Positions 20,101 to 48,300 of a DNA stretch of 64,000 nucleotides are shown piece after piece. A program made the translations under genes and the position numbers. Source of the stretch: Auanema rhodensis (Eukaryota > Animalia > Nematoda); the NCBI GenBank assembly GCA_964057225.1, contig OZ059898.1, positions 5,704,001 to 5,768,000 on the forward strand, given 5' to 3'. The first letter of the stretch is position 1; every line of letters starts with the position of its first letter. The notes beneath the pieces were generated by a model. The model made no database searches, was not told where the DNA came from, and saw only the letters and a program-made list of their open reading frames with translations.

Positions 20101-23100
20101 TACTCAGTACAATGTTACTGTTCAAGCTGCTACATCAAAGGAAATGTGTGGAGTAAGTTTTAATTAAACTATTTAATATTATAAAATAGTTGATAATCAT
20201 TCTTAATTGTGATGTTTAGGGTACTACTACTACTATGTGGACTGATGCTGCTCCATTGACTGCATTAGCCGTTGCCCCACGTATTCTTGCCGAAGAAGCT
20301 ACTTCTATCACCATCGAATGGGACAGCCACAACCGTGAAGCAGGATCTTTCATTGTTGAATATCGTCTTGAAGGTGGAGCTTGGCAACAATCTGCTAGAC
20401 GCATACCTGCTCATCCATCTGTCACCACTTACACTGCTACTGTTGATAATCTTCCAACTAATAACGTTGTTGATCTTCGTGTTCGTGTAGTTAGTCAACA
20501 GAATGAGCAATCTAATCCATCCCCAGAAGTTCGTGGACGCACAAAATGTTCTCCACCACCAAATCCTCCACAGGGTATTCGTGTTGATGCTCCAAATACC
20601 AATGAAGTTCGTGTCTCCTGGACTCGTCCAGCTAAGAACACTTGGATGTGCGATGAAATGAATACTGAAATCAGCTACCGTGTTGGAAATCAACCAGAAA
20701 AAACTGTTAAAGTCCCAGGAGATCAGACTGAGTACACCTTCCCAGCTGAACCTAATCAACGCTGGATTATCAAGCTTCGTGCCACCAATCAAGTTGGACA
20801 CAGTCCATGGAGCGCTGAGCAAACTATTACCACCCGTCAAGGAGCTCCAGGATCTGTTCGTGATCTACGCGTTAAGGCTTTATCTCCTAACGAGGTTCAT
20901 GTTCAATGGCTGGCTCCTCTCGTTCAACGTGGTACCATTGTTGGTTATGACATCAGTTATCGTCTGAAACATCGTCTTGCTTGTCCAGAGGAAGAGCCCA
21001 GAGACGTCAGTCGCGACTTTGTTACCGTTTACAATCACAAAGATCTTGATTACACTATTACTGGTCTTCTACCATACTCTCTATATGAAGTTCGTGTTCG
21101 TGCTCGTACTACAGAACTTGGACCTGAAGAATCGAAGGAAGTTTCTACAGAACAACAGCCACCATCATCTCCACCACTCAATCTCGAACTTACTTATGCT
21201 CTCGAACGCTCATTATCCTTCCAATGGGAATCAGTTGATTGCTCACAGCGTCACGGACATATCGTTAACTACGAATACGAAATTCTTGGTCAAGACGATT
21301 GGGCTAAACTTGAACGTCAAATTGCTAACACATCTGATACAAAGATTACTATTGAAGGTCTTACTCCCTACACCAAATATATCATGCGAGTAAAGGCTTA
21401 TAACAGCATTGGTGGAGGTCCAAACACCGAAAATCTTGACGCCATGACTGCCAAGGCTAACGCTCCACTTCCACCACAAGATCTTGTTGTCGCTCAGGAA
21501 GGAACTGATTTCTTCATGGTTTCATGGCTTCCACCATATCCACCATACGGTCCTCATGATGCTTACAAGGTTCGCTACCAACTCTTGGGTCCCGACAACA
21601 AATGGAACACAATTGAAAAAGGAATTCATGATGCTGCTCTCAAATGCCCAGCTGAATCTCCAAGATTCTGCTTCAATGCTACCGGATTAGATTCAGGACA
21701 ACAATATCGTGTACAAGTTTCTTGTCGCATTGAAGGAGGAAACTATGGACCTTGGTCTTCTATCGTTATTGCTAATACACTTCAAGTTTTACCTGATGCT
21801 CCACGCGCTATTCATCTTATTGAAAAGAGTGATCACTCCCTTCATATTCGCTGGATACCACCTGTTGATCCTAAAGGACATGTAAAACAATATCGTGTTT
21901 CCATTGTTTCTCTTGATGATGTTAATGATCAGCGCAAGAGCTACACCGTTGATCATCCAACTCTCACACATCTCTTTGATGGCTTGACCCCAGAAACATC
22001 ATATAACATTTCGATTGCTGCTGGAACAAAACAAGGATTTGGACGTGAAATCTGGACTAGATACACCACAGATCCATTCGTCATTCCTGTTGTTGGAACT
22101 ATGCCAACAGTCACTCCTGATGGAGCATCAGCTTTAGATGTTCAATGGCAAGGAGTTGTAGATCCACAAAACCGTATCAAGGGATACATAATTGAAATTC
22201 GTAATGCTGACACACCTGTATGGCAAGAAATCGGAGGTGTTATTCAACACGACCCTGTGAAGAGAACTTATCTTAAGAAACTTACCGGTCTTGATCCTGA
22301 CACTCTCTACTTTGTTCGAATCAAGGTTGTTGATAACAAGCAACGAGTAGGAGTTCCATCACCTGAAGCCCAAGGGCGTACAGGATGTGCTGCACCAACC
22401 GCACCACCAAGCAATGTTAATCTTGCCTCTCCATCCAATGTTCAAGTTCGTGTTAGCTGGCAAGCTCCAGTTAAAGCTTCTTGGCTTTGCTCCAATATCA
22501 GATACCGCTTGGAATACACCAATGGAACTAGCGGACGCAAACAACTGGAAATTCCAAATGCTAACATTGAGCATATCTTTGATTCGCCATCAAACACCAA
22601 ATGGGTTGTGCGTATTCGCACCGAAAACGACGCTGGAGCCTCAGAATGGAGTAAGGAACTCGAGCTTACCACAGCTGAAGGTGCTCCAAGTGCTGTTCAA
22701 GATCTAACAGCTACTCCAAACGGACCAACAAGCGCTGTTGTATCATGGAAGCCACCTGCAAATCCAAATGGCGCCATCACTGGATACACTCTTGTTTACA
22801 ACTTACGTTCAATCGGGCAGTGTGGACCACGTAGTTCAACTCCAATTGAGAAGCACGTACGTAGTGAAACTCAAACTCTCGATGGACTTCTTCCTGACTC
22901 CACTTATGATATTCATGTTATTGCCCATACCTCACATGCTGGACCCCAATCTTCAGTTGTATCTGTTACAACAGAAGAAGCTGTACCAACAGGCCCACCA
23001 ACCAATCTCCGGTGAGTAAAATTATTTAATTTGCTTTTTTTATCATATTTATTTTAGTGTGGGATCTGTTACATCTAATAGAGCTGATGTTATGTGGTCT

Positions 23101-26100
23101 CAACCTGATTGTGAGCTTCGCAATGGTAAAATCACCGATTACTATTACGAACTTGAAAGCATCGATAGCTGGGGACACAATACTTCTGATCATCATACTC
23201 AGGAACGTCTTACCCTTAACGATCTTGTTCCATACACTGAATACCGTGTTCGTGTTCGTGCCATCAATGCTGTAGGTGATGGACCATTTAGTGAATGGGT
23301 TACTTTCAACACCCAATCTGCTGCACCTCCAGCACCAACTGATCTTCAAGAAGAGGCCAGCTTCCCACATGCCATCGAAATTAGTTTCTTGCCACCAAGT
23401 CCTCCACATGGAAACATCGATTACTATCGTATTCGTCATACTCCATCAGGCGATGCTAACTACAAGGAAGTTCGCGTTGAAGTTGATCGTCTCGAATGCT
23501 CTGATTCCAACAAGCGCGATCGTTTGTGCTTCCGTGTATCTGAGCTTGATCCTGAACAAGAATATGATATTCAAGTAGCTGCTCACACTGAGGGAGGAGC
23601 ATGGTCTGAATGGTCTGATGCTTTGAACGCTCGTACCCAACAACAGAATATTCCTGTATTGGAACGTGAGCTCGAAGTTATTGATACCAAACCAAACTCA
23701 ATCTCCTTGAGATTCGAAGGATTGCCACAAGACCAAGCTACTCATGTTCTTGGATATATTCTTGAATACAAACCTGAAGATGATGGTTCTGAATGGCAAG
23801 AATACAATGGAATGATCAAGCACCGTAAGGGTCTTACTGATTATAAGGTTACTGTCAAGGAGTTGGAAACTGCTACCCTATACTTCTTCCGATTGAAGGT
23901 TGTTGGTAAGGGTGAGAAACGTGGAGCACCTGGACCAGAAACTAAAGCAATGACTAGCTGCGGAAAGCCAGAAGAACCACCTAGCAACATCAAACTAGAA
24001 AGTGTCGATTTCCAGACAATGAAGATTAACTGGCAGCCACCATCAGAAGACTCATGGCGCTGTGATGATGTTGAATTCGTAATAGACTATGTCAACACTA
24101 CATCACGTGGACAGTGGACAGTATCTGTAGATGCTCCAAATGAGCTTATCGTACCAACATTACCAGGAACCAAATGGGAGATCAAGATGAGAACTCAGAC
24201 TAAAGAAGACAACGCTAAGCCACAGACCAGTAAATGGAGTGACAAGGTTTCTTTGACTACCCAATCTCTTCCCGGAGAGTTGTTTGTCAATGTTGAGCCT
24301 CAAGGACCACGTGAAGCTGTTGTTACCTGGGATCTTCCTGATAAGGATCAGAAATGGAATTATGGAGTTGATATCACTTACCGTCTTAAACAACTTGGAG
24401 GATGCTCTGAAACCGCAAGTGGATCTCATGAACCTATTACTAAACTTAATGTGCAAGAGAAACAAATCAAGCTTGAAGATCTTGCTCCAGGAAGTTTGTA
24501 CGAAGTTATTGTAACTCCACGTAGACCACCGTCACTTCACTCTTCTATCGTCGCACCAAAGACTGTTAGAACCTTCCGTACTGACAACGATGTCCCAGTT
24601 GGACCACCAACAAATCTTCAATCAACAACTAGAAAGGATACTGAACTTGGATTCAAATGGGAAGCACCAGATTGTATTAATCAAAATGGAAACATCACTC
24701 AATACGAATTTGAATTGGTTGGACTTGACGAATGGAATGAGGGAGTTCGTGAGGGTGTCAGCTCTCGTCTCAACACTGTCGTTGATCAACTTCAACCTGG
24801 TTCCCTTTATGGTATGCGTGTTCGTGCGTACACTTCTGAAGGTCCAGGACCATGGTCTGATCAACTTAGTGTCAGAACTACCGGATCTGAACTTGGACCT
24901 CCACGTGAGCTCACAGCGGTTCAAACAAAATCAACCCAGATTCAACTTACATGGCTCCCACCATATCCAGAAAAGGCTATTGTCACAGCTTACAGAATTC
25001 GCTACAGTCCACGTGCAGATGACTCAAATCCAACTGAAGTTGAACTCTCCGGTGATGATTTGACTTGTACTGGATACAAGAGTCCTATCATCACAACCGC
25101 AAATCTTTGTGCCACCATCAAGGGACTCCAGCCATCTACAACTTATCGCTTTGCCGTTCAAGGACAATCAGCTTCTGGAACATGGGGAGAATGGTCCAGC
25201 GACTACTTCTCCACTACCAGAAAGGATGACAATGATCTTTTGGGCGGAAGTCTTCGACTTCTCTCAGCTGGCCATGATAATTTTAAAGTTAAATGGACTC
25301 CACCAGCTGTTATTGGAGAAAAGATTGATAAGTATGAGCTTTTCATCTCCGTGGCTTCTGTTCTCGATCAGAATCCTAAGAAGTATGAGACACCAGGACG
25401 CGTTTATGAATATCATTTCCGCGCATTAGAACCTGTAACCCAATACAACGTCACTGTTCAAGGATTGGATGAGAACAGCAAGCTCTGGTTCATATCCGCT
25501 GTCTTTGCCACCACTGACTTTGCTGAAGGTCTTCTCAGCTGGCTGCCAGCTCCAACTGATCTTCATCTTATTGAAAAGAGTGATACCATGCTTCACGTCG
25601 ATTGGGTACCACCTGAGATCTTTGATCCAGAGCAACGTGAATTGATTACTCATTATCGTGTTACTATTGCTCCATTTGATCATCATACAGGCATTACTGG
25701 AACACCAAAGAATTACACTGTTCCAGTTCCCGGAAATTCTATCAAATTCGAAGGACTTAATCCAGAAACTGTTTACAATATAACCGTCCAAGCTGGAACT
25801 AACTCTGGCTATGGTCATATTCTCTGGGGTACCTACAGTACTCTGGCACCTGGACAACGTCATATTCTCCGTCTCCTTAACCGTACTCCAACCACCTTAA
25901 CGGTAGAATGGGAACCAGTTTGGGGCCGTAGCCATAGTGGATACACTGTATGTTTTAATTTTTTTGAACGTATTTTTATGATTCTTATTTCAGCTTACTG
26001 CTAGATCTCTTCACTCAGTTTTCCCACATGTCAGAATTCACCAGCTTAAATCATTTGATGTCGATGCTTCTGAAACTGAATTTGTTATTCGTGGACTTCA

Positions 26101-29100
26101 TCCATCTACCGTATACAACGTTACTTTAACGCCAAAGGATCATAATGAAGTTGCTTGGGGTGCATATGCTACTCTACCACCTGGCTGGTTCATGGTCAAG
26201 AACTTGAAGCAATGTGACCGTACCGATTTCGCTGTTTCCATGAGCTGGGAACCTGTTGAACTCAACATGGCCTCAGATTATCAAGTCAGATATCTTCGTC
26301 TTAAGGATAACGAAGCTAGCTGGATGGAAGAAGTTGCTCGTCCAGCTAAAGAGCTGTTGTGCCCTAAGGATGGATGCGGACGTCTTTGTTATCTCGTCTT
26401 CAACTTACCACACAATCCATCTGAATATGTGTTCCAAGTTCGTGCTAAGGTTGACGGTGAATGGAACCACTGGAAGTCAGCACCAAAGAAGGTTATAAGT
26501 ACTGAGCCAGCTGAGGTTCGCCGTAGCTGTTGTATCGTACCTCCACCTTACTTCGTTGATAACATCGGAGCACCAGGAACCTACTGGGAAGTTGATGTTA
26601 ACCCTGCTGCTACAGAAAAGAACATTACGTAAGTTTCTACATAAGCTATGAACTCTCAAAAAATAATGTCTTGCAGGAGATATTATGTTGTTGTTGATGA
26701 ACGTGATCCCCCTGGAGATACCAACTGGACCGAACTCACTGACAAGGTTACAGCTAACAGCATGAAGATTCCATATTATGTTGCCGCATCCTTCAATTTG
26801 GAAACCCTTCCTGAACCTAGAAAGGTTGGTATCATCTTAAATTATTAAAACTGAATATAGTAATTTCTTAAATTCTAAAACGATTTGGTGATAAAAATCA
26901 GATTTTACGCTAATATTATGATCAGCCTTTTCGTTTACTCAAGCAATGTAAAGACCACTTATAGTTTCCTATCGTTCAATATATGAGGTGTTATACTACT
27001 TCTCATTCTCTCTCAAAATTTTATAAAGAGACTTTAATAGTGTTTGATTTAGTACATGTTTACATTGCATGCGACAATACTATATACAGACATTTTATTC
27101 TTTTATATTGTGAATAATCAATATAATAATAGCCTTCTTAAAAGAAGCATCATAACCTAACTTGATATAGCTAGCTGGATAAAAATCGTTTTATTTATTT
27201 GTTTTGAAATGTACTCATTCTATTGCTTTAGGTTCGCCTCGGAGATGGACAAGTTATTGGAGGTTATTTGAATTATCCATTAACTAAAGGAAAGAAATAT
27301 AACTATGAGATTTATACCATATGGAATGTAACTGGAGCACCATTAGTTGGACGTCTGAGAGGTACGTGATATGTTCTAAGTTACATTGAAAACTTCAATA
27401 ATCGAATGCGTTCATATGAAAGCTAAAGAGACAAAGAAATGGAGTAAACGCCTTTCTAACCAAGCAAAAATCAAAATAAGAAAGAAAATAAGGAACAAGT
27501 TTGCCAAAACTAGAAGCAATTATGTGTAAAAGAAGAAAAATTGGTAGAAATAAATAGTTTCTGTCTCTATCTCTCTCTATCTTTCTCTCTCAATCTCTCA
27601 ATCTCTCTATATCTCTTTCTTCCTATTGATATCATGATGTTAATGATGACCCTCCAAATAGCTTATAGCAATCTCTATCTTTGCGTATGCCTGCTAGCGT
27701 AAAATGATTAATAAATCGACAATAATGTGAAGATAAGTGATGGAAAAGGAAGCAGATATAGACAAGAAAGGTGGATACATAGAGTAGAGGTTTAATCAGC
27801 GGGTTTATCGATGAAGTATATGTTGTTCAGATATATCTATAATGTTTAGATCATTAATATCATCGGTAAAACAGAATGAAATTTCCAATCTAACGATATT
27901 TCATTTTTCACTCTTTACCTCTACTCTTTTTTAATGATCTCTCTATCTCTCACTCTCTCATTATAATAAGTTTTCATATTCTATCACCTACATTTCCTTA
28001 AATCAACCAATGCGCAACACACCCTTTTACACACATCCATGTTCTCTTATTTTTCTTTGTTTCTCTATTCCTTCTCTAAATCTCTTTCTTATTTATTATC
28101 TATAACAGTCAACTTTAATTCAAGAAATGAGATAGATAGTGAAGTTAACCATGAGATTCAGAATTTCAAGATAGCGTGAATAGAACCAACTTGTGGGGCG
28201 GAGAGAAATAAGGAGAAAATAGCGAAAATGTAAAGACCCAGACGATAAAGGAAATGCAAGCAGTACGACTGTGCAATTGACGAGATAGCACAGACGCAAC
28301 CGTTTAGTTAGCAAGAAAGCTGAATGACATGGAGAAAGAGAATTAAGAAATGGAGAAAAAGGATGGAGTATATAAAGGAAAGAAACGAGAGGAAGAGAGA
28401 AGATGAACAAGTGTGAGAGTAAAAGAGAATGAGAGAGAAAAAGAAAGAGGTAGAGACAGAAAGAGAGAAAGAGAGAGAGAGAGAAAGAGAGAGAGAGAAA
28501 GCCACCAGCAGCCTTGTCACCCCCTGTGGCCACCCTACGGTTTTGTCGTCATCTACGCTCTACCCCGTACGCACCGTAAATGGCTTGGCTGCCCGACGGT
28601 ACGTTTACATTCCTGACATCCTCATACGATTCTACAATCATTCATATATATTCGAGCTCTAATATATTTAATAGTTTATATACATTTTTATTAAAACAAT
28701 AGTTAAATAATTAGTTGTATTGTTTTCATTCTATAATTATAAAATATAAACATGATATCTATTGATAATAATATCCTATCAATTTATATTTTATTTTACA
28801 ATTATTCTTCTAGTTATGGCAAACATTTATCCTTTACTTATATTATTTCTATTATTTTGAAATTTTGTTTTTTAAGTTTCTCAAGCAATTACAACGAAAA
28901 AAAGCTTAACATTTTCTTATCAATAGTCGAATGTTAGTTTATAATTCATTTTCACTTGAAAAACTGTGAAATTCTTTAAATGTCATCATATCAATCAATG
29001 CCATTGAAATGAATTATAGTGTTTTTATTTCTTTTTAATTATTAAAATTTCATGAAATTAAATATATTACTTTAACTATGTATTATTATTTTGATTATTT

Positions 29101-32100
29101 CCAAAAACAGATCAAAAACATTCTAGATGTACGTAGTTTCTGGCAACGTGTACCATGGTGGTGGATAATTCCACTACTTGTCACATTATGTATTCTTCTA
29201 CCATGTGTAGCATGGCTTTGTTGTTATGCTCGGTAAGGAAGAATAGTAGCTTCTTTGATGATAAAAGCATGTTTCCTCAACATTTTCTTTGTACAGCTAC
29301 TACTTCTTTCTAATTAACTTCTATAGACTGATGTCTTACAGTCACTATTCATCTATTACCTTTCTATCAAACTTTTCTTAATAAGTAAACTGACAACATG
29401 AATTTACATTACCATTCAAAACAACACTAATTAAAATTTATTAATTTACTGTAATAATTAATTGGAAAAATGCTTGTGGTTAAAATAATTACAGTATTAT
29501 ACCATCATTTATAAAATTTATCCCCCCCCCCCTCATAACAAAGATAACATGTCAACATTTTTATTCCAGCTTCACCATACATCACAGCCGGATGGCCGTG
29601 GTGGTGGTTGCTTCTTCTTCTACTATTACTTCTTCTTTTAATTCTTCTCACCTGCTGTCTACTATGGTGTATTCAACGGTAATTTAGTTATACATATCTA
29701 ATTATATAATTATAACAACAAGGATCATGGACAAAAAGGGAACTTCATTATAAAATTATGTGATTCACATGCATGATTGTTTGATACTTTTACATATTTT
29801 CCATTCCATTTATTATATTAACAATTCATTTTCCATTTAAAAGTTTCCATAAACAGTAATAATCATTATATTTTAGACGATTCCGTTCTCGTAAAGAACA
29901 CCGTCGACTTGTAACCAATGGACAACATGTTCCACTTCTTAATGATGTAAGTATTAAATTATTATTATTGTGTATATTATAATTATTTGTTTTATTACCA
30001 AATTTTCATATTTTTCTTACAGGACAAGGCTATGGAAGCTAATTTACGATCATTGGAATCACGATTGGATAAAATGAGAGATGGAAGAGGTAAGACTTGT
30101 ATAGAGAAGAATGTATTGAAAATCTAAAGATGAAAGAAGAGGAGTGATGAGTTGACAAACTGAACACAAAAGGATTGACATTGAAATCAATAGCAAAAGT
30201 AAAAAAATTTGAATTGAAATAGTAAAAGAAATAATGAGAAAAGAAGATTGATCTATCTCTCGTTCCTTTATTACCTTAAACTATTGCCATTATTCATTTG
30301 AACTACTAAAACATGTTGATATTATTAGTTATGGAAATCTCTTTATAAAAAAGGGATTATAACCAAGTTTTTATGAAATATTTAATGTGTGAAAACGAAG
30401 ATCAAACTTGAAAAAGAAGTATATATGTTTATATGTATATGATGTCTGTGGTATAAAACGTATCTCGACCTCGACACCATTGCTGATATCAAAGAAGAAT
30501 GAATGAAAAAGAAAATAAAGATAAAGAGACTAATAGATCTTACTCTTTCCCTGTTGCCAATTTCAATCTGTGAACTTCATGTTCAATTCTCTTATTTGTA
30601 GTTTTCATATTAGTTGAAGAAAAAATTTATCAATTAGTTTGATTCTAATTATACAGATGAGAAACCGTTTAATATTGAAATAGTAATAGTTTTTGATATC
30701 ACTTTAAATAAAATATAAATAAACTATATATTTTATTATAAATAATAATTAAATTATAAAAACATTTTTATCTTAAATTATTAGAAATATTTTGGTTTTT
30801 AAACGATATGTTCTAAATTTAAAAAAAACTTTTCTCTCTGTTTATCAATCAGCCGGAATGTCAAGAAGTCCTTGAATATGTGGGTGTGGTCGACGACGTC
30901 GTTCATATTAGGCGCTTCATCGCATGTCGTAGTTGTCATCGTTTGTAGTATAGGGTCGAATTTTCAGAATCATTGTCTTTATTTATTTTCTCACAAACAT
31001 ACATACATCTATACATACATATAAAAGAAAGTTATAGTATGACAGGGGAGAAAAAGAAGGACATTTGAATGTATGTATATGTGTATCTGTATCTACACCT
31101 GCATATGTTTTTTTTAAAATATATATATAAATATATATAATTCTAAATATTTTAATATAAAAATAAATATATTATATATATAATTATAAAAAGAAGAACA
31201 ATGTGTACATACAGATCAGTACATATTTGACATAAATTAACGAAAATTAGTGTGAATATTTCATAATGAAGATCTTCGCATGTGAGAGATAGAGATAGTT
31301 CGATAGATGTTCAATGATTTTTCTGATATATTTCTTCTGATTACGACAAGAAGACATCACTTGGAAAATACTATAAATTAGCATTAAATTGGATCAGAAT
31401 GGTGTTAGATTAGAAGAAAAGAAATTTTTATCCATCATTCGATTGAATAAATTTGATTTTTAGGTTCAGGAGATTTTGAGGATGGTTACATGAAGGGATA
31501 CCGTGATGCAAACAAGCTTGGATCAGCTTCAGCCGCCAGAAGACGTATGGATGATGATTTCGGAGGTCGTGACGATCGTTTCCGTGAGGGATACAGTAAG
31601 GGTCTCAAGTACGTATCCTGTTATCGCTAGATTATAGCATATAATATGAATTATAAATTATCTTTGAATTGGTTTCAGGGACGCTGGAATGACTGGAATG
31701 TCGACTTCTATGCATAATTTGGCCAATAAGGGAGCATCTGCTGGCGGATACTCTGCTGGCTTTATGCAAGGATACAAGGTAAATAATGTAGAAAATATTA
31801 TTATTAATACAAAGATAATTACAGGATGGTGGTTCTGGAATCTTTGGTGACCGTGTAACTCCATCCCTCATTTCACGCTTGGATGACCAATATCCTGGTC
31901 AAGACGATTTCAAGCAAGGATATGTTGACGGCTTCAAGGAAGGAGCTGCTTCACGTACTGGTGAAAAGAGAGTAAGTTTTAAGAAATAAATAAATTGTTA
32001 TACTTCTTTTGTAGACATTCGAGGATTCTCGCCGTCTCCAACAATCTCTGACTGAGCTTACCGAGAGATTGACTTCTCTTGAGAAGACTAAGGGAGATGA

Positions 32101-42500: not shown

Positions 42501-45336
42501 AATAAATATTTGATGGAATGCTTGAAATCAGTAACTTATGCTATCTGGATATCGATGAGCCTGCTGACCTTTATCATTTGATGACCAAAGAACACAAAAT
42601 GCAGAAAAAATGAGAAATACGAAGATGATGACGATTAAAAAGAAAAAGAAATGTTAGTTCATGGAAAAAGGAAGAAAATAGTTGTAGTTTTAGAAAGTTT
42701 GTCTTTGTAATAATCCCATTTCTCAACAATAGCGATAAATGCCGTGTTCGTATTAATCGTTATGAACTTGTATTGAATATGACGAGTAATAGATAATGTT
42801 GCCAGAAAAAAATGGAAAAAGAGGTAAAGATGTGAAAATCGTCGATGAGCATTTCTTCATCGTTCGTTTAATCTTATCACTCAAAATTAACCAGGTCTGG
42901 TAGAGATAGAGGCAGGAGAACTGCTCCAGAGCAAAGGCGAAAGAAATAAAGAAGAAGAATCAAAAAGGAAATAAATGTGTCTAGAAAGAGGTAAAATGAA
43001 AGAGAATATGTGTAAAAGAGAGAAGAAAAGAAAATTCAATGGTCCAGTTGGAGGTATGATCTATAAGAGAGCGAGGAAAACTACATCTTTATATTTTAAC
43101 TATTCTGTAAGATTAATTAAAAGATTAATTGAAATAATAATATAATAAATTGGTAGCAAATTGTTTACTTTGTATTTCATTGAGTGATTATTACAAACAA
43201 CCTTTTTTGCTGATGTCAAACGTTTTTCTTTGACTAATCTGATTGGTCATCTGCTTTCTGATGTACCTATCCCAGACTATGATACTGCTTTTTAGGTTTT
43301 TGATGTTCAATGATTATTGTGATAATGTTTCATCACTTACTAATCTTTTAACTTGTATATATATATAGTTAGTTAGTTAGTAAGATAGGTAGATGTATGT
43401 TTACCTGATTCACTGTCTAGCTCTAATTTTGTCGTTGATATATATAGATATATTTCTTCTTTAAATTACAATTCTTTAATGTGAATTTACAACATCCAGT
43501 TTTAAATGATTAATGCCTTTCTTATAAATGTGATGAGCTTTACTTAAAACCTCTGAAATGTTTTTTAAAATGAAAAGTAATGTCATAAGCCAAAATAGGG
43601 GTACTATAAGTGATAAGAGAATCTATAGAAATAGTGGGTGAGAATAGTAGAGAATGAACGAGAGAGCTTATGTGTCTTTGAATCTCCGATATACTACTCC
43701 CTTTTGGTCCATATCATACGTCGTTCTCTCTCTTTTTCTCTTTATGTCCCCCCTCTCTTTATTTTCTTATTTCTCTACCTATCTATGCTCAATCTACAAT
43801 GTTATTTTTTTAACAATATATTATTCATAATCTTCATATAGCCTCTGACATTGAGCATTTTAACTAAGTGTGATGTATGATTATCTAAGCTTAACTTCTA
43901 AGTTGTCTTAACACTCATTATGATAAATGTGAAAAAAAATTTTTTTAATCTGTTACCGTAGTTTAAGCTACTACTACAATCTCATTTTACATATTTAACT
44001 GATCAGAAAAATTCATATCTTTCATCGTTCACGGATTTTTGCATTCAGTTCGCCAACGTTATCGGGCTACATAGCTTTTCCCCGTTTTTCTCTCACAATC
44101 ATTTTTCGATTTTTTGAATTTTTGAATTCATTACTACAATAAATGAATTTTTTTTACAGGATTCTGAAAATGGCTGCCTAATAAGTGTTCGTCTATTTTT
44201 AAAGCTTTACTATTATTAAATAGTATAAATCAGTGTTTCACGAGTTGAAAATACTTATAACTTAGGCGGATATTGTGACATTCATTTCAAAAATATTCTA
44301 CAGTAGTACTCAACAGTTATTCTGAACACGGAATTAATCTACGGATCATTTAGAATACGGTAAGACTTTTGTGATTTTTTCGAATCCTGATTTTCAACGT
44401 TGAGTCATACGTTGATGGAGCATCCAAAGCCTCCGTCGATTGATCATGACGATGCCTTAGATGGTGTCTGTATATTCGCCCTGGTTACCCAAGTACCAAC
44501 CCCTTTCCATTTCCCTGTCGCCTATAAATGCGAATCATCTCTCATTCCAGTGTCTTGACGAATCATCTATCCAGATCCGTTCTTTTCTTTTTTTTTCTGC
44601 TTGTTAGATTTATCCAATATAACTACTCATTTTATAATCAACTATCCAAACAATATTATTTTTAAATTTTCAATTATATAATCTAAATTATATATTTATG
44701 TCTAACATTACTAAACAAAAGTGATATATCTGAATCCTCAAGATTATGACTTGTTTCAGATTTCTTGCTAACACAATTACTTATAACTCCACATCATCCT
44801 ATATCTACGACATATATACATATACCTTTTAACAACATCAGTTTCATACTCAGAGGTTAGTTTAATTAGCTTCAGCTAGATTCTCATCTTTCATTAATCC
44901 CTTGTATTACAAAAAAACTTCATGTTTTTACAGGGAATCATTCGAAATCGCTCTCTCGAATTTTTCGAGGTTCATCTGATTCTCTCCTTATTTCCCCTTC
45001 ACTATTATTAGCTATATCTTATAAAGTTATATTAATCACTTTGTGATTTTTGTCAGTCAACTTATTCATCCTTTTTCAATTAAATAAGCCATACTTTAAG
45101 TGTTTTGTTAATTTTTATTTTATTTTTTTTATCCTTCAATTCCTCAATCTTGCTCCTGTTTTTCTTCTTTCTCTCTCTCCAAATTACATTTTATCGTTTA
45201 CTATTCCATTTAGACCAACCGTCTCTATCCTCTTCGATTCTCCTCCCCTTCTCCCACCAACTCCCCCTCCCCACCTTCTCCCTTCGTAAGTCGACTCCGC
45301 CCCTGGTGTCTTTCGCACTTCGGGTAGTGGCGCGGG

Positions 45337-48300
45337 ATGCGGCTGTTGCCTCTTTTGCCAATCGTCATTCTTGCCGCCCCCCTACCTAAGTCGACAGAAT
45401 TCGACAGAACTGTGGTAAGTTACAATTTTTCTATGATTTTTTTTAAAATTTAAGCTAATTTTATGAATTTTATGTAATTTTTTTTACTATTATATTCATT
45501 TATTTCATGATTGAGTGTGCGTTCAAGTCAGATGGCATACACATTCTTATTCTTTATCTGTCTTCGAAGCATTTCTTCTTTCTTGTGCAGGAAGTAATTT
45601 TGGTACATTAAGTGTAGAAGTCACATTTTTGTACTTGAAACAATTTCATTTTTAGTTTGATTTCAAGGCACTCTATACATTTCTCATTTTGTCTCTCTGT
45701 TTTTAGTCTTTCTTTTTCACAACCTTCTTCGTTTTTGTTCTCTATTATCGTCTCATTTTATCATCAACTTTACCGTTTTTTTCTCTATTTTTCTATTCAA
45801 TTTTATATTCTTAGCTAATATTCTCTAGCTGTTAGTATCTATATTAAAGAAAATCCGACGTATTTGATCTACGTTAATTCGGAAATTATGTAGGTTTTCA
45901 ACTTTAACTCTACTCTTTGTTCTTCATATTGAACGGTAGACTAAAAGAAAAAACAACAGCAGAATATCATAAGGATATATCCAAATAGATTAATATGAAA
46001 AGGGAAATACCTTCCGATGACGATCCGAATGATGTAGATCTGAAAAAAAATGTGTGGCTTACCTTACCATTTTTTTCGCCATCTCCAGGTCGTTCATCAT
46101 CATCTAAACTATCTAGCGATAAGAGCCATCTTTTCTATTACCCTTGATGTGTGGTAGTTATGAAAAATGACAGAAAAAAAAGATAAAGACATAGTATGAC
46201 CATAAAAAGAATGTCTCTTATTCTAATAAATCTTTTGAAAGACAATGTTTAACACACTTTTTAACAATTATCACCTTCTATCTCCAATATATAATGTATA
46301 TTGTTATAGATATCTGATATATACATATATACATATAATATTGTAGTTTGCAGATTTAGCCATAAGCAATTCAAGCCTACATGACTGTTATTAATGTTTT
46401 GTTGTCGATAGACATCATGCTGATGATGCCATGTCTGTTGCATATTCAGCATGGGTATTGATATGATTGGGATGGCTGGTATATGGTACTCATTCCTCTG
46501 TTCTCATGTAATATCTCATTCTGCTTCACACATTAAGATCATCATTGTCGTCCGTTTGAACTTTCTTCAACTTCTGCTGGACATGGCGGTCTATAATCTG
46601 AACCAATTGCCTTGACCTTAGAAAAAGTTTAATTCACGTGATCTTTTTGTCTTCCTTTATCTACCGTAACTCCAAAATTGCGATATTCCATCCCCCCTCC
46701 TGCTAATTTTCATAACAATCATCTCATTATCTATTCATCTTGTAATACCTTTCACACTCAGTTTTATCAGAAAACTGATAAGACATAAAAACATTTATCA
46801 AAGATATCACATTAGAGGAACCATTTTTGCGTTCTTAATCTTTATGTTTCGGTTACTCTAAGACTTATTCTTCCTGATGAAATAGGATGAATACACCATT
46901 TAGTATCACCTCTTATTATCAATTAGCTTTCAAGCCGATTTTTTGAAACCGAAATAACTATGAAAAATTGTTTTCCGTGTTAAAACTAGATAATTTAAAA
47001 AGTTTTACTTCCCTTATATGTTAGCCTATATATTTCATATGGATGAGGCTTCCTTCACTTCTTTGTTATATGTTGAAAGTTAATAAACTAATTCATAATT
47101 GAAAGAATTAGTTTACATTTCAAAAAATACTGATTAATACGATAAATATCTCATCAGCAATTCTATGTTAGATACAAGGGTTATTTTAGAAAAAATTAAA
47201 GGATACCAAATGAAATGCAACCTGTAAGGTGAATGTCTGGCGGCTTTATCAGGTCACTTTCCTATTAAATCTTCTGATTAAAACTGAAGGCAAGATCTGA
47301 ATGTCACTTAGATTGAAACTCAGCTCAAAAGGCATGACCTTCACATCGTCTCTATCTTCTTTTTCTTTATTTCTTTTTACCCTCTTCATTCTTTCTCATC
47401 TTTGTCTATCATTTTCATTTTTGTGTAGTTCAATCATCCGGATGTTTTTTTGTCTGTATATGACATAATGAACTCAATTTCTGGAAAAAAATCTCCGATT
47501 ACAAAAAAAAGTCCTTATCATAAAATATATGAAAATGTAATTATAAAATATCATATTTTGTGTATGACTAATTAAAGATCAGATTCAATCAAAACTTAAA
47601 TGTATGTTGGTTCCGATGACGTAGGAACCAGGTTCAAAGCCGTCTCGTCAACTGTTAATCAATATATTCACATCTGCTTAAACATTTATTTCAAGACAAA
47701 ATTAGTTTCGAAGCGGGGAAATCAATTTTTCTCTTGGTTCAAGATGTAAAATAAACGAACCTGCCAGGGCTACCCTGGGTTCGTGCCGTCACGACTGAAT
47801 GCTTTCTGATCCGTACTCAAAATGGCCGATGTCCTTGCGCATCCTCTACATAGTGTCCCACTAATTTTTCGATTCCTGTTCACTTTTTTTCTGTCTGATC
47901 TGTGTCGATGATACCTTTTAACGAACTAGCATCTTGTCAAACATCATATCGACAATGGGAATCGTCTAGTAATGCGATATGTGGACAAAGTAGTCTGGGG
48001 ATGACAATGCTGCAGGTGCTATTGCTCACATAATCTGTCTAAAAACAATAAATAGATAAGAGAAGCATTTAAAAACTAAGCTGCAAACTGTACATTTAGA
48101 TAAGCGGATTCAGATATATTAAGAAATTTAGATTATATCCGATAATCTTAATATTTCTCTCCTTCTTTCCCCCATGCTTTTGCTTGAGCTGGTATGAGTT
48201 GAATAGCGGCTAAAAATCATTTTGGCATTTCATGTCTGAACTATGAGTCAATTAAACTTGTCTTTCATTAGATAATCAACCTAATTTTCATAATAACACC

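What the first reader, a model, noticed from the sequence alone, without database searches (positions are those of the whole stretch)
28400..29232. Intronic start exon predicts an ectodomain-less 'mini-myotactin'
Seen: the intron upstream of the TM exons has a GA-rich tract (28430-28500) followed by a GC-rich island (28500-28610). The island ends in AAAATG GCT TGG CTG CCC GAC G|GTACGT (28580-28598). The donor hexamer and phase are the same as those of the last ectodomain exon (27361 G|GTACGT). Spliced to TM exon A it reads MAWLPDDVRSFWQRVPWWWIIPLL...CCYARRFRSRKEHRR followed by the whole cytoplasmic tail: ~550 aa, no FN3 domains, no cleavable signal peptide. The layout (polypurine/polypyrimidine tract, GC island, ATG, donor) resembles that around the MMP first exon at 45200-45414. 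Inference: an internal promoter produces a signal-anchored tail-only isoform that could scaffold or compete with full-length myotactin. Exon A may be dedicated to this isoform, an alternative to pure mutually exclusive splicing.
Basis: partly seen in the sequence, partly recalled or inferred. Interest (0 to 1): 0.8.

Follow-up and report, generated by a model that had tools for sequence, protein, structure and literature searches.

The report
Conserved start exon for tail-only myotactin
A 19-base start exon (Met-Ala-Trp-Leu-Pro-Asp) inside an intron of this worm's myotactin gene is conserved in the same intron of distant roundworms, so the gene probably also makes a short membrane-anchored protein without the extracellular rod, though no RNA from this worm shows it yet.

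Summary
The sequence is as described, apart from two details: the bases before the ATG read GTAAATG, and that TAA is an in-frame stop. ATG GCT TGG CTG CCC GAC G|GTACGT lies at 28580-28604, after a GA tract and a GC-rich block. It sits in the 2.2-kb intron between the last ectodomain exon and the two alternative transmembrane (TM) exons of a LET-805/myotactin orthologue.

It is not a chance ATG plus donor. The same mini-exon occurs once, in the same intron and on the same strand, in all five comparison loci without an assembly gap there:
- Ancylostoma caninum, MAWLPD
- Heligmosomoides polygyrus, MAWFPD
- an environmental rhabditid, MAWFPD
- Dictyocaulus viviparus, MALLPN
- Toxocara canis, MAVWPD

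Each has ATG, five codons, one extra base and GT. Among the four closest sequences most changes fall at third codon positions. Between the window's intron and two of the orthologous introns it is the only significant conserved block.

An environmental intron-free contig reads MSVLPD joined directly to TM exon B and the tail. Its 536-base leader has no FN3 coding.

In this organism, RNA contigs (four runs, one study) show only 27361->29570. Nothing covers the mini-exon or exon A. The promoter, the transcript start and the protein are inferred. The idea that exon A is dedicated to this isoform is not supported.

I found no description of a tail-only isoform. I rate it a new variant of a known kind.

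The parts
27232..27361 (+). Last ectodomain exon of the myotactin orthologue. It ends in phase 1 with donor G|GTACGT.
   Evidence: RNA contigs join 26824->27232 and 27361->29570. The translation VRLGDGQVIGGYLNYP...VGRLR matches the C. briggsae and strongylid LET-805 models.
28340..28500 (+). Purine (GA) tract upstream of the mini-exon. It may be promoter-proximal, or simply a microsatellite.
   Evidence: 74-91% purine at -300..-101. A similar purine tract lies upstream in the environmental rhabditid L007 but not in the strongylids or Toxocara.
28501..28579 (+). GC-rich block, the putative 5' leader of the short transcript. It holds CAGCAG| acceptor-like sites 68-71 nt before the ATG and ends in an in-frame TAA (28577-28579).
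   Evidence: GC is 0.62. The in-frame stop lies directly upstream of the ATG. No Rfam or tRNA match.
28580..28598 (+). Coding part of the conserved alternative first exon: ATG GCT TGG CTG CCC GAC G (MAWLPD plus one base, phase 1).
   Evidence: Found once, in the orthologous intron, in A. caninum, H. polygyrus, D. viviparus, T. canis and environmental contig L007. Joined to exon B in L001.
28599..28604 (+). 5' splice donor GTACGT of the mini-exon.
   Evidence: The same hexamer is a working donor at 27361 and 31608 in this gene (RNA joints; hexamers). A GT donor follows the mini-exon in all five orthologues.
29127..29232 (+). TM exon A (19A type; DVRSFWQRVPWWW...), phase 1 to phase 2.
   Evidence: Conserved in L002, L004, L006, L007, L008, L009 and in C. 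briggsae proteins. Not covered by any RNA contig of organism A.
29570..29678 (+). TM exon B (19B type; ASPYITAGWPWWWLLL...). This is the TM exon used in the available RNA.
   Evidence: RNA joints 27361->29570 and 29678->29877. It is the partner of the mini-exon in L001.
29877..31971 (+). First five cytoplasmic-tail exons common to all forms: 29877-29946, 30023-30089, 31464-31608, 31679-31778, 31825-31971. The tail continues downstream.
   Evidence: RNA joints. In-frame translation from the mini-exon through either TM exon. 63% identity to P0045.

Best explanation
28580-28598 is the coding part of a conserved alternative first exon of the myotactin (LET-805) gene.

Proposed mechanism: a transcript that starts inside the intron after the last ectodomain exon carries a short GC-rich leader and the start codon. 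Its start would be either its own transcription start upstream of the GC block, or a spliced-leader acceptor in that block. Its GTACGT donor is spliced in phase 1 to TM exon B or TM exon A, and then to the common tail exons.

Product: a protein with a stub of about 15-20 residues, one hydrophobic span and the whole cytoplasmic tail. It has no signal peptide and no FN3 rod.

Topology: there are six net positive charges just after the span and none before it, so the span should insert N-out/C-in as a reverse signal anchor. That puts the tail in the cytoplasm, as in full-length myotactin. There it could occupy or organise the same hemidesmosome and intermediate-filament partners without reaching the muscle side.

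Shown: the sequence, its conservation, the frame, and the joined form in another nematode. Inferred: the promoter or start site, expression in this species, insertion topology and function.
For: Position and form
- Six genomic sequences carry ATG + 5 codons + 1 base + GT once each. All are on the gene strand, between the last ectodomain exon and TM exon A, with no other match in 227 kb on both strands.
- They are the window (MAWLPD), A. caninum L009 (MAWLPD), H. polygyrus L006 (MAWFPD), environmental rhabditid L007 (MAWFPD), D. viviparus L004 (MALLPN) and T. canis L008 (MAVWPD).

Unbiased comparison
- In intron-against-intron blastn the mini-exon is the only significant block between the window and L007 (28 nt, 89%, E 3e-4).
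- The same holds between the window and A. caninum (21 nt, 95%, E 2e-5).
- The multiple alignment shows invariant columns only there.

Coding signature
- The ATG is invariant.
- Among the four MAW[LF]PD sequences, four of five variable sites are third codon positions: GCT/GCC/GCG, CCC/CCT, GAC/GAT, and the third base of the Leu/Phe codon.

Start, not internal exon
- In the window an in-frame TAA abuts the ATG. In L007 a TAA lies two codons upstream.
- No upstream in-frame ATG precedes the start in any locus where the upstream sequence can be read; in H. polygyrus an assembly gap abuts the ATG.

Joined form
- P0045/L001 reads MSVLPD|ASPYLAAGWPWWW... It is collinear with the window's mini-exon, exon B and five tail exons across six intron positions (63% identity).
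- Its 536-nt leader has no FN3 coding.

Splicing and topology
- GTACGT is a proven donor twice in this gene.
- Flank charges are 0 or -1 before the span and +6 after it.
Against: - Organism A's RNA contigs (four runs, one study) show only 27361->29570, with zero depth on 28400-28600 and on exon A. Contigs drop rare forms and the stage or tissue is unknown, so this is weak evidence of absence. It still gives no support.
- L001 comes from an unidentified organism and sample. That it is a spliced RNA is inferred from its lack of introns. Its 5' 536 nt could be unprocessed precursor.
- No other protein starting with this mini-exon was found in a 1.84-billion-representative HMMER search or in the word searches.
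- No promoter or start-site data exist.
- Three strongylid assemblies have gaps at or right beside the spot (L002, L003, L006). L002 and L003 are uninformative.
- C. elegans and C. briggsae DNA could not be retrieved.
Confidence: 0.72

Rival explanations
1. The ATG, short frame and GTACGT are a chance combination in a repeat-rich intron and have no function. This was my prior at the start.
For: No RNA contig of organism A covers it. It lies next to a GA microsatellite-like tract. Short ATG...GT strings are common in AT-rich introns.
Against: The same six-codon exon, with the same phase and a GT donor, lies in the orthologous intron of five other nematodes, out to Toxocara. It is the only significant conserved block between the window's intron and two of those introns. 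The pattern is expected 0.01 times per window. It is seen joined to exon B in L001.
Confidence: 0.04
2. The conserved block is a splicing-control element rather than a translated exon. For example, it could be a decoy 5' splice site or docking sequence that helps choose between the mutually exclusive TM exons A and B.
For: It sits just upstream of a known mutually exclusive exon pair (Hresko 1999, PMC2150558). In H. polygyrus and A. caninum it lies only about 46-48 nt before exon A. The donor is part of the conserved block. No expression was seen in organism A.
Against: The ATG is invariant, and among the closest sequences variation is mostly at third codon positions, with the peptide M-A/S-x-hydrophobic-P-D/N kept. 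These features are not expected of a pure RNA element. L001 shows the sequence in a mature-looking joined form, at the head of the open reading frame. The two roles are not exclusive.
Confidence: 0.12
3. A longer version of the exon, starting at the GCAG-type acceptor 35-91 nt upstream, is included as an internal cassette in the full-length mRNA. In the window this would stop the ectodomain frame at the TAA that abuts the ATG. The result would be a secreted FN3 rod, and possibly the tail by re-initiation, from one mRNA.
For: A GCAG lies 35-91 nt upstream of the ATG in all seven sequences; this was noticed after the fact. From the window's acceptors at -68 and -71 the ectodomain frame runs open to the TAA directly before the ATG (read).
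Against: The outcome differs between species: a stop in the window, an in-frame 18-residue insertion in D. viviparus, and a frameshift in A. caninum. These follow from the distances. Selection for one such product is therefore unlikely. No RNA contig shows such an exon. L001's leader has no ectodomain coding.
Confidence: 0.06

Closest known systems
C. elegans LET-805/myotactin forms A and B (Hresko et al. 1999, PMC2150558)
   Same: Same gene family. It has a long FN3 ectodomain, two alternatively used TM exons (19A/19B) and a unique cytoplasmic tail with optional exons. The window has the same layout, and exon B use is confirmed by RNA.
   Different: Both described forms start at the SL1-spliced 5' end and carry the whole ectodomain. 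No tail-only form or intronic start exon is described. The Northern blot used an ectodomain probe, which could not detect one.
Short gamma isoform of neurexin (C. elegans nrx-1; PMC11304965)
   Same: One adhesion-receptor gene encodes a long and a short isoform, and isoform-specific alleles give each its own genetic role. From my own knowledge, not checked here: the gamma form arises from an internal start and keeps the TM segment and cytoplasmic tail but almost none of the ectodomain.
   Different: It is an unrelated protein and a neuronal synaptic system. For nrx-1 the short form is shown experimentally; here it is inferred from conservation and one environmental transcript.
Internal-promoter short isoforms of giant linker proteins (dystrophin Dp71, PMC13305302; nesprin KASH-only isoforms, PMC3981789)
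   Same: A giant structural gene also yields small C-terminal products that keep the membrane or partner-binding end and may scaffold or compete. I saw these papers only as abstracts.
   Different: They are vertebrate genes of other families. The analogy concerns mechanism only.
Type III (reverse signal-anchor) membrane proteins
   Same: They have a short N-terminal stub, no cleavable signal, one hydrophobic span, and positive charges on the C-terminal side. This rests on the positive-inside rule, which is established knowledge.
   Different: The topology is predicted from charge counts only and was not tested.

Membership tests
LET-805/myotactin orthologue (host gene) | Long array of fibronectin type III repeats in the ectodomain | tested here: met
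   Pfam fn3 scores E 1.7e-89, with 7 stretches in the 978-aa exon 23068-26001. That exon is 80-85% identical to C. briggsae FN3 proteins whose C-termini carry the myotactin TM segment and tail.
LET-805/myotactin orthologue (host gene) | Two alternative TM exons followed by the unique cytoplasmic tail | tested here: met
   Exon A is 29127-29232 and exon B is 29570-29678. Exon B and the tail are joined in RNA contigs. The tail aligns to the C. briggsae, strongylid and ascarid tails. Pfam has no family for the tail, in line with the 'unique sequence' of Hresko 1999.
LET-805/myotactin orthologue (host gene) | Conserved neighbourhood (matrix metalloprotease gene downstream) | tested here: inconclusive
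   A Peptidase_M10 gene lies downstream of the D. viviparus orthologue. The window's candidate MMP first exon at about 45.3 kb was only read. It was not searched or confirmed.
Alternative-first-exon (internal start) isoform | A start exon inside an intron of the long form, with a conserved ATG and a donor in the phase of the downstream exons | tested here: met
Alternative-first-exon (internal start) isoform | A transcript that begins there and lacks the upstream exons | tested here: inconclusive
   L001/P0045 shows the joined form with a non-FN3 leader, but in an unidentified nematode. Organism A's contigs show none.
Alternative-first-exon (internal start) isoform | Promoter activity, a mapped transcription start or a spliced-leader site | not testable with these tools
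   No CAGE, RACE or chromatin data were available, and the one read-laying run returned contigs only. Indirect hints are the GC rise just before the ATG in most loci and a 30-nt element conserved between A. caninum and D. viviparus, 35-55 nt before the ATG.
Type III signal-anchor membrane protein | Short N-terminal stub, one hydrophobic span, net positive C-terminal flank | tested here: met
   The best 19-residue windows have mean hydropathy 2.6 (exon A) and 3.5 (exon B). The N flank charge is 0 or -1 and the C flank charge is +6. This is a prediction only.

The most novel reading that the evidence does not exclude
In some conditions a longer form of the exon (from the upstream GCAG acceptor) is spliced into the full-length mRNA. 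In this species the ectodomain frame would then stop at the TAA that directly abuts the conserved ATG. One gene would yield a secreted FN3 rod and a separate membrane-anchored tail, the tail either by re-initiation on the same mRNA or from the internal transcript. That would uncouple the muscle-side and cytoskeleton-side halves of the hemidesmosome receptor.
Probability: 0.05. Interest if true: 0.85.

Novelty: new variant of a known kind. Interest (0 to 1): 0.6.

Why it matters
Myotactin is the basal receptor of the nematode epidermal attachment structures (fibrous organelles) that pass muscle force to the cuticle. All published work treats it as a ~500 kDa protein.

A conserved ectodomain-less form would be a second gene product, with several consequences:
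- It would be missed by ectodomain antibodies and probes such as MH46 or the 1999 Northern probe.
- It would be hit by RNAi against the tail and by C-terminal tags.
- It could scaffold tail partners or compete for them.

Conservation from ascarids to rhabditids argues that it is functional. It is directly testable in C. elegans if the mini-exon is present there, by start-codon editing that spares the long form.

It also bears on gene annotation in parasitic nematodes. There the tail is often called as a separate gene with an arbitrary start.

Tried and rejected
- RNA gene in the GC block: Rfam at E<=10 gave only chance-level snoRNA hits, none with E below 4.5 and all far under their gathering scores. 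There is no tRNA there. Rejected.
- Repeat or transposon origin: the block has no second copy by pattern in the window. I did not run a full repeat search.
- C. briggsae locus: P0001 and P0003 are not on record as gene products. No Caenorhabditis DNA was obtained, and Logan contig L010 starts downstream of the TM exons.
- Nippostrongylus (L002) and Teladorsagia (L003): assembly gaps cover the spot. L005 lacks the region.
- Word search with the N-terminus of P0045: it found only itself.
- HMMER against 1.84 billion representatives: this returned no other protein beginning with the mini-exon. P0072, P0086 and P0088 are intron read-through fragments, and the locus of P0052 is not on record.
- Metagenome scan for exon B: one genomic contig was found (L007). 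It proved useful.
- Literature: searches for a named short LET-805 isoform or an internal promoter found none.
- Internal cassette use of the mini-exon: rejected as the main reading, because of the abutting TAA and the inconsistent frames between species.
Full report
**What is there**

The window carries a large gene on the + strand, running from about 12.7 to 34 kb.
- Its 978-residue exon (23068-26001) is full of fibronectin type III repeats (Pfam fn3, E 1.7e-89).
- That exon is 80-85% identical to C. briggsae proteins whose C-termini carry the myotactin TM segment and tail.
- Notes from this scan describe the genome as a Caenorhabditis-like rhabditid that is not Caenorhabditis. I did not test that.

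The finding lies in the intron between the last ectodomain exon (27232-27361) and two tandem TM exons, A (29127-29232) and B (29570-29678). These correspond to the alternatively used exons 19A and 19B of C. elegans let-805 (Hresko et al. 1999, PMC2150558).

**The observation**

One search confirms ATG GCT TGG CTG CCC GAC G followed by GTACGT at 28580-28604. It has the same donor hexamer and the same phase 1 as the exon ending at 27361.
- Upstream lie a purine tract (91% purine at -200..-101) and a GC-rich block (0.62 at 28500-28599, against 0.14-0.24 just downstream).
The TAA at 28577-28579 is an in-frame stop directly before the ATG.
- Joined to exon A or to exon B, the frame runs on into the tail.
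- The GC block is not a known RNA gene.

**Expression in this organism**

The run search found four runs of one study. The contigs laid on 26000-31990 are spliced at GT..AG sites, so they are RNA.
- Three runs have 13.2-kb contigs that join 27361 to 29570 (exon B) and then run 29678->29877, 29946->30023, 30089->31464, 31608->31679 and 31778->31825.
- No contig covers 28400-28600 or exon A.
- Contigs drop minor forms, so this shows that the long, exon-B form dominates in those samples. It does not show that a short form is absent, and it gives the claim no direct support.
- In run X2 the contigs break exactly at the junction: one ends at 27361 and the next begins with G plus exon B. That pattern is typical of a branch in the assembly graph. 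I treat it only as a weak hint.

**Comparative evidence, which changed my view**

I started at about 75% for a chance ATG plus donor.

A word search with the C. briggsae tail returned a 295-residue JGI protein, P0045, that begins MSVLPD|ASPYLAAGWPWWW.
- Its 1504-nt contig (L001) has 536 nt of leader with no FN3 coding, then the ATG.
- From the ATG an open frame is collinear with the window's mini-exon, exon B and five tail exons. It bridges six intron positions at 63% identity.
- The join falls after GAC G, which is the phase and place of the window's donor.

I then fetched the orthologous introns.

| Source | Locus | Peptide | Donor |
|---|---|---|---|
| Window | - | MAWLPD | GTACGT |
| Dictyocaulus viviparus | L004 | MALLPN | GTGGGT |
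| Heligmosomoides polygyrus | L006 | MAWFPD | GTGAGT |
| Environmental rhabditid (genomic) | L007 | MAWFPD | GTACGT |
| Ancylostoma caninum | L009 | MAWLPD | GTGAGT |
| Toxocara canis | L008 | MAVWPD | GTAGGA |

- In H. polygyrus the mini-exon lies 48 nt before exon A. In A. caninum it lies 46 nt before exon A.
- L007 also has a purine tract upstream.
- T. canis, an ascarid, is the most distant of the identified species.
- In each case the match lies between the last ectodomain exon and exon A, on the gene strand. It is the only match to ATG-N9-CCN-RAY-GGT in the locus, and there is none elsewhere in 227 kb on both strands.
- Nippostrongylus and Teladorsagia have assembly gaps at the spot.

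Because that pattern was shaped after seeing the sequences, the unbiased test is intron-against-intron blastn.
- Between the window's 1765-nt intron and L007, the mini-exon is the only significant block (28 nt, 89%, E 3e-4).
- The same is true against A. caninum (21 nt, 95%, E 2e-5).
- The multiple alignment has invariant columns only there.

**Why a start exon**

- The ATG is invariant.
- Among the four closest sequences, four of five variable sites are third codon positions. This points to selection on the peptide.
- In the window a TAA abuts the ATG, and in L007 a TAA lies two codons upstream. The frame therefore cannot be entered from the ectodomain exon in those species.
- If one assumes the nearest upstream acceptors, the result is a stop in the window, an in-frame insertion in D. 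viviparus and a frameshift in A. caninum (distances). Only the 'start here' reading is the same in all species.
- GTACGT is a proven donor at 27361 and 31608 in this gene.

**Mechanism proposed**

A transcript starting in the intron carries the GC-rich leader and the ATG, and is spliced to exon B or exon A and then to the tail.
- The promoter may lie in or before the purine tract and GC block.
- Alternatively a spliced leader may be added at one of the GCAG-type acceptors, which lie 35-91 nt before the ATG in all seven sequences. That was noticed after the fact.
- The product has a short stub, one strongly hydrophobic span and +6 net charge just after it. By the positive-inside rule it should insert N-out/C-in, leaving the tail cytoplasmic.
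- Function is inference. The tail may act as a membrane-anchored scaffold for myotactin's tail partners at epidermal attachment structures, or as a competitor for them.

**What is not supported**

- Exon A is not the dedicated partner. L001 uses an exon-B-type exon. C. briggsae and Nippostrongylus models join the ectodomain to an exon-A-type exon. The deposited form A sequence of C. elegans is described as including 19A.
- The likeness to the MMP first exon is only one of general layout.

**Known or new**

- The two TM exons and the optional tail exons have been known since 1999. The Northern blot in that paper used an ectodomain probe.
- I found no description of a tail-only isoform in the searchable literature.
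- No Caenorhabditis protein of 211-670 residues carrying the tail came up in the word search.
- No other protein beginning with the mini-exon appeared among 1.84 billion representatives.
- I could not inspect WormBase models or C. elegans DNA, so prior annotation there cannot be excluded.
- The kind of thing is familiar: a short C-terminal isoform of a giant adhesion or linker gene made from an internal start, as with the short gamma isoform of neurexin, dystrophin Dp71 or short nesprins.
- I therefore rate it a new variant of a known kind.

**Verdict**

- The core of the interpretation, a conserved start exon for an ectodomain-less myotactin, is well supported by comparative data.
- Expression, the promoter and the function in this species remain to be shown.
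- Confidence: 0.72 in the full statement, and about 0.85 that the mini-exon is a real conserved coding start exon.

Noticed in passing
L009:4197-4226 and L004:8103-8132; partly L002:2361-2388: A 30-nt element, GGGGCGTGGTRGTYGRYGGAGACGCAGACC, lies 35-55 nt upstream of the mini-exon ATG. It is 87% identical between A. caninum and D. viviparus. Its GGAGACGCAGA core recurs in Nippostrongylus just before the assembly gap. It is a candidate core promoter, leader or splice-acceptor element of the short transcript in strongylids.
   Followed up: partly
window 28507-28512 and the equivalent sites in L001, L002, L004, L007, L008, L009: A GCAG ends 35-91 nt upstream of the conserved ATG in all seven sequences. 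I noticed this after the fact, and the chance per sequence is about 0.4. It may be a spliced-leader or cis-splice acceptor.
   Followed up: partly
window 27361 / 29569-29570 (run X2): In run X2 the transcript contigs break exactly at the exon junction. One ends at 27361; the next begins with G plus exon B rather than AG plus exon B. This fits an assembly-graph branch with a second upstream partner ending in a base other than A followed by G, such as the mini-exon or exon A. No such contig was laid.
   Followed up: no
window 29127-29232: TM exon A is conserved across nematodes but has zero RNA-contig depth in all four runs. In those samples only exon B is assembled.
   Followed up: partly
window 30891-31047 and 27526-27695: Two short, low-depth RNA contigs (run X1 only; depth 4.3 and 2.8) lie inside introns. 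The first overlaps a GC-rich block at about 30850-30950 in the 1.4-kb intron 30090-31463. It has no clear open frame or splice sites. They may be pre-mRNA scraps or small unannotated transcripts.
   Followed up: partly
L002:2389-2986, L003:3368-4336, L006:1175-2216: Three independent strongylid draft assemblies have gaps at or immediately upstream of the expected mini-exon position. This suggests a region that is hard to sequence, for example GC-rich or repetitive. It explains why gene models there split the tail from the ectodomain.
   Followed up: no
L001:1394-1504: The environmental contig runs past the exon that ends ...SASALGR into GTCAGT-type sequence. It looks like an unspliced intron at the boundary where Caenorhabditis has the optional tail exons. 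The contig is therefore a partly processed or alternatively terminated RNA.
   Followed up: no
window 61928-61999 (-): A tRNA-Cys (GCA) gene was predicted by ARAGORN.
   Followed up: no
window 45338-45415: This is the candidate first exon of the downstream metalloprotease gene. An ATG is followed by a signal-peptide-like MRLLPLLPIVILAAP... and a GTAAGT donor, and is preceded by a polypyrimidine tract. A Peptidase_M10 gene also follows the myotactin orthologue in D. viviparus (L004:27461-30014).
   Followed up: no
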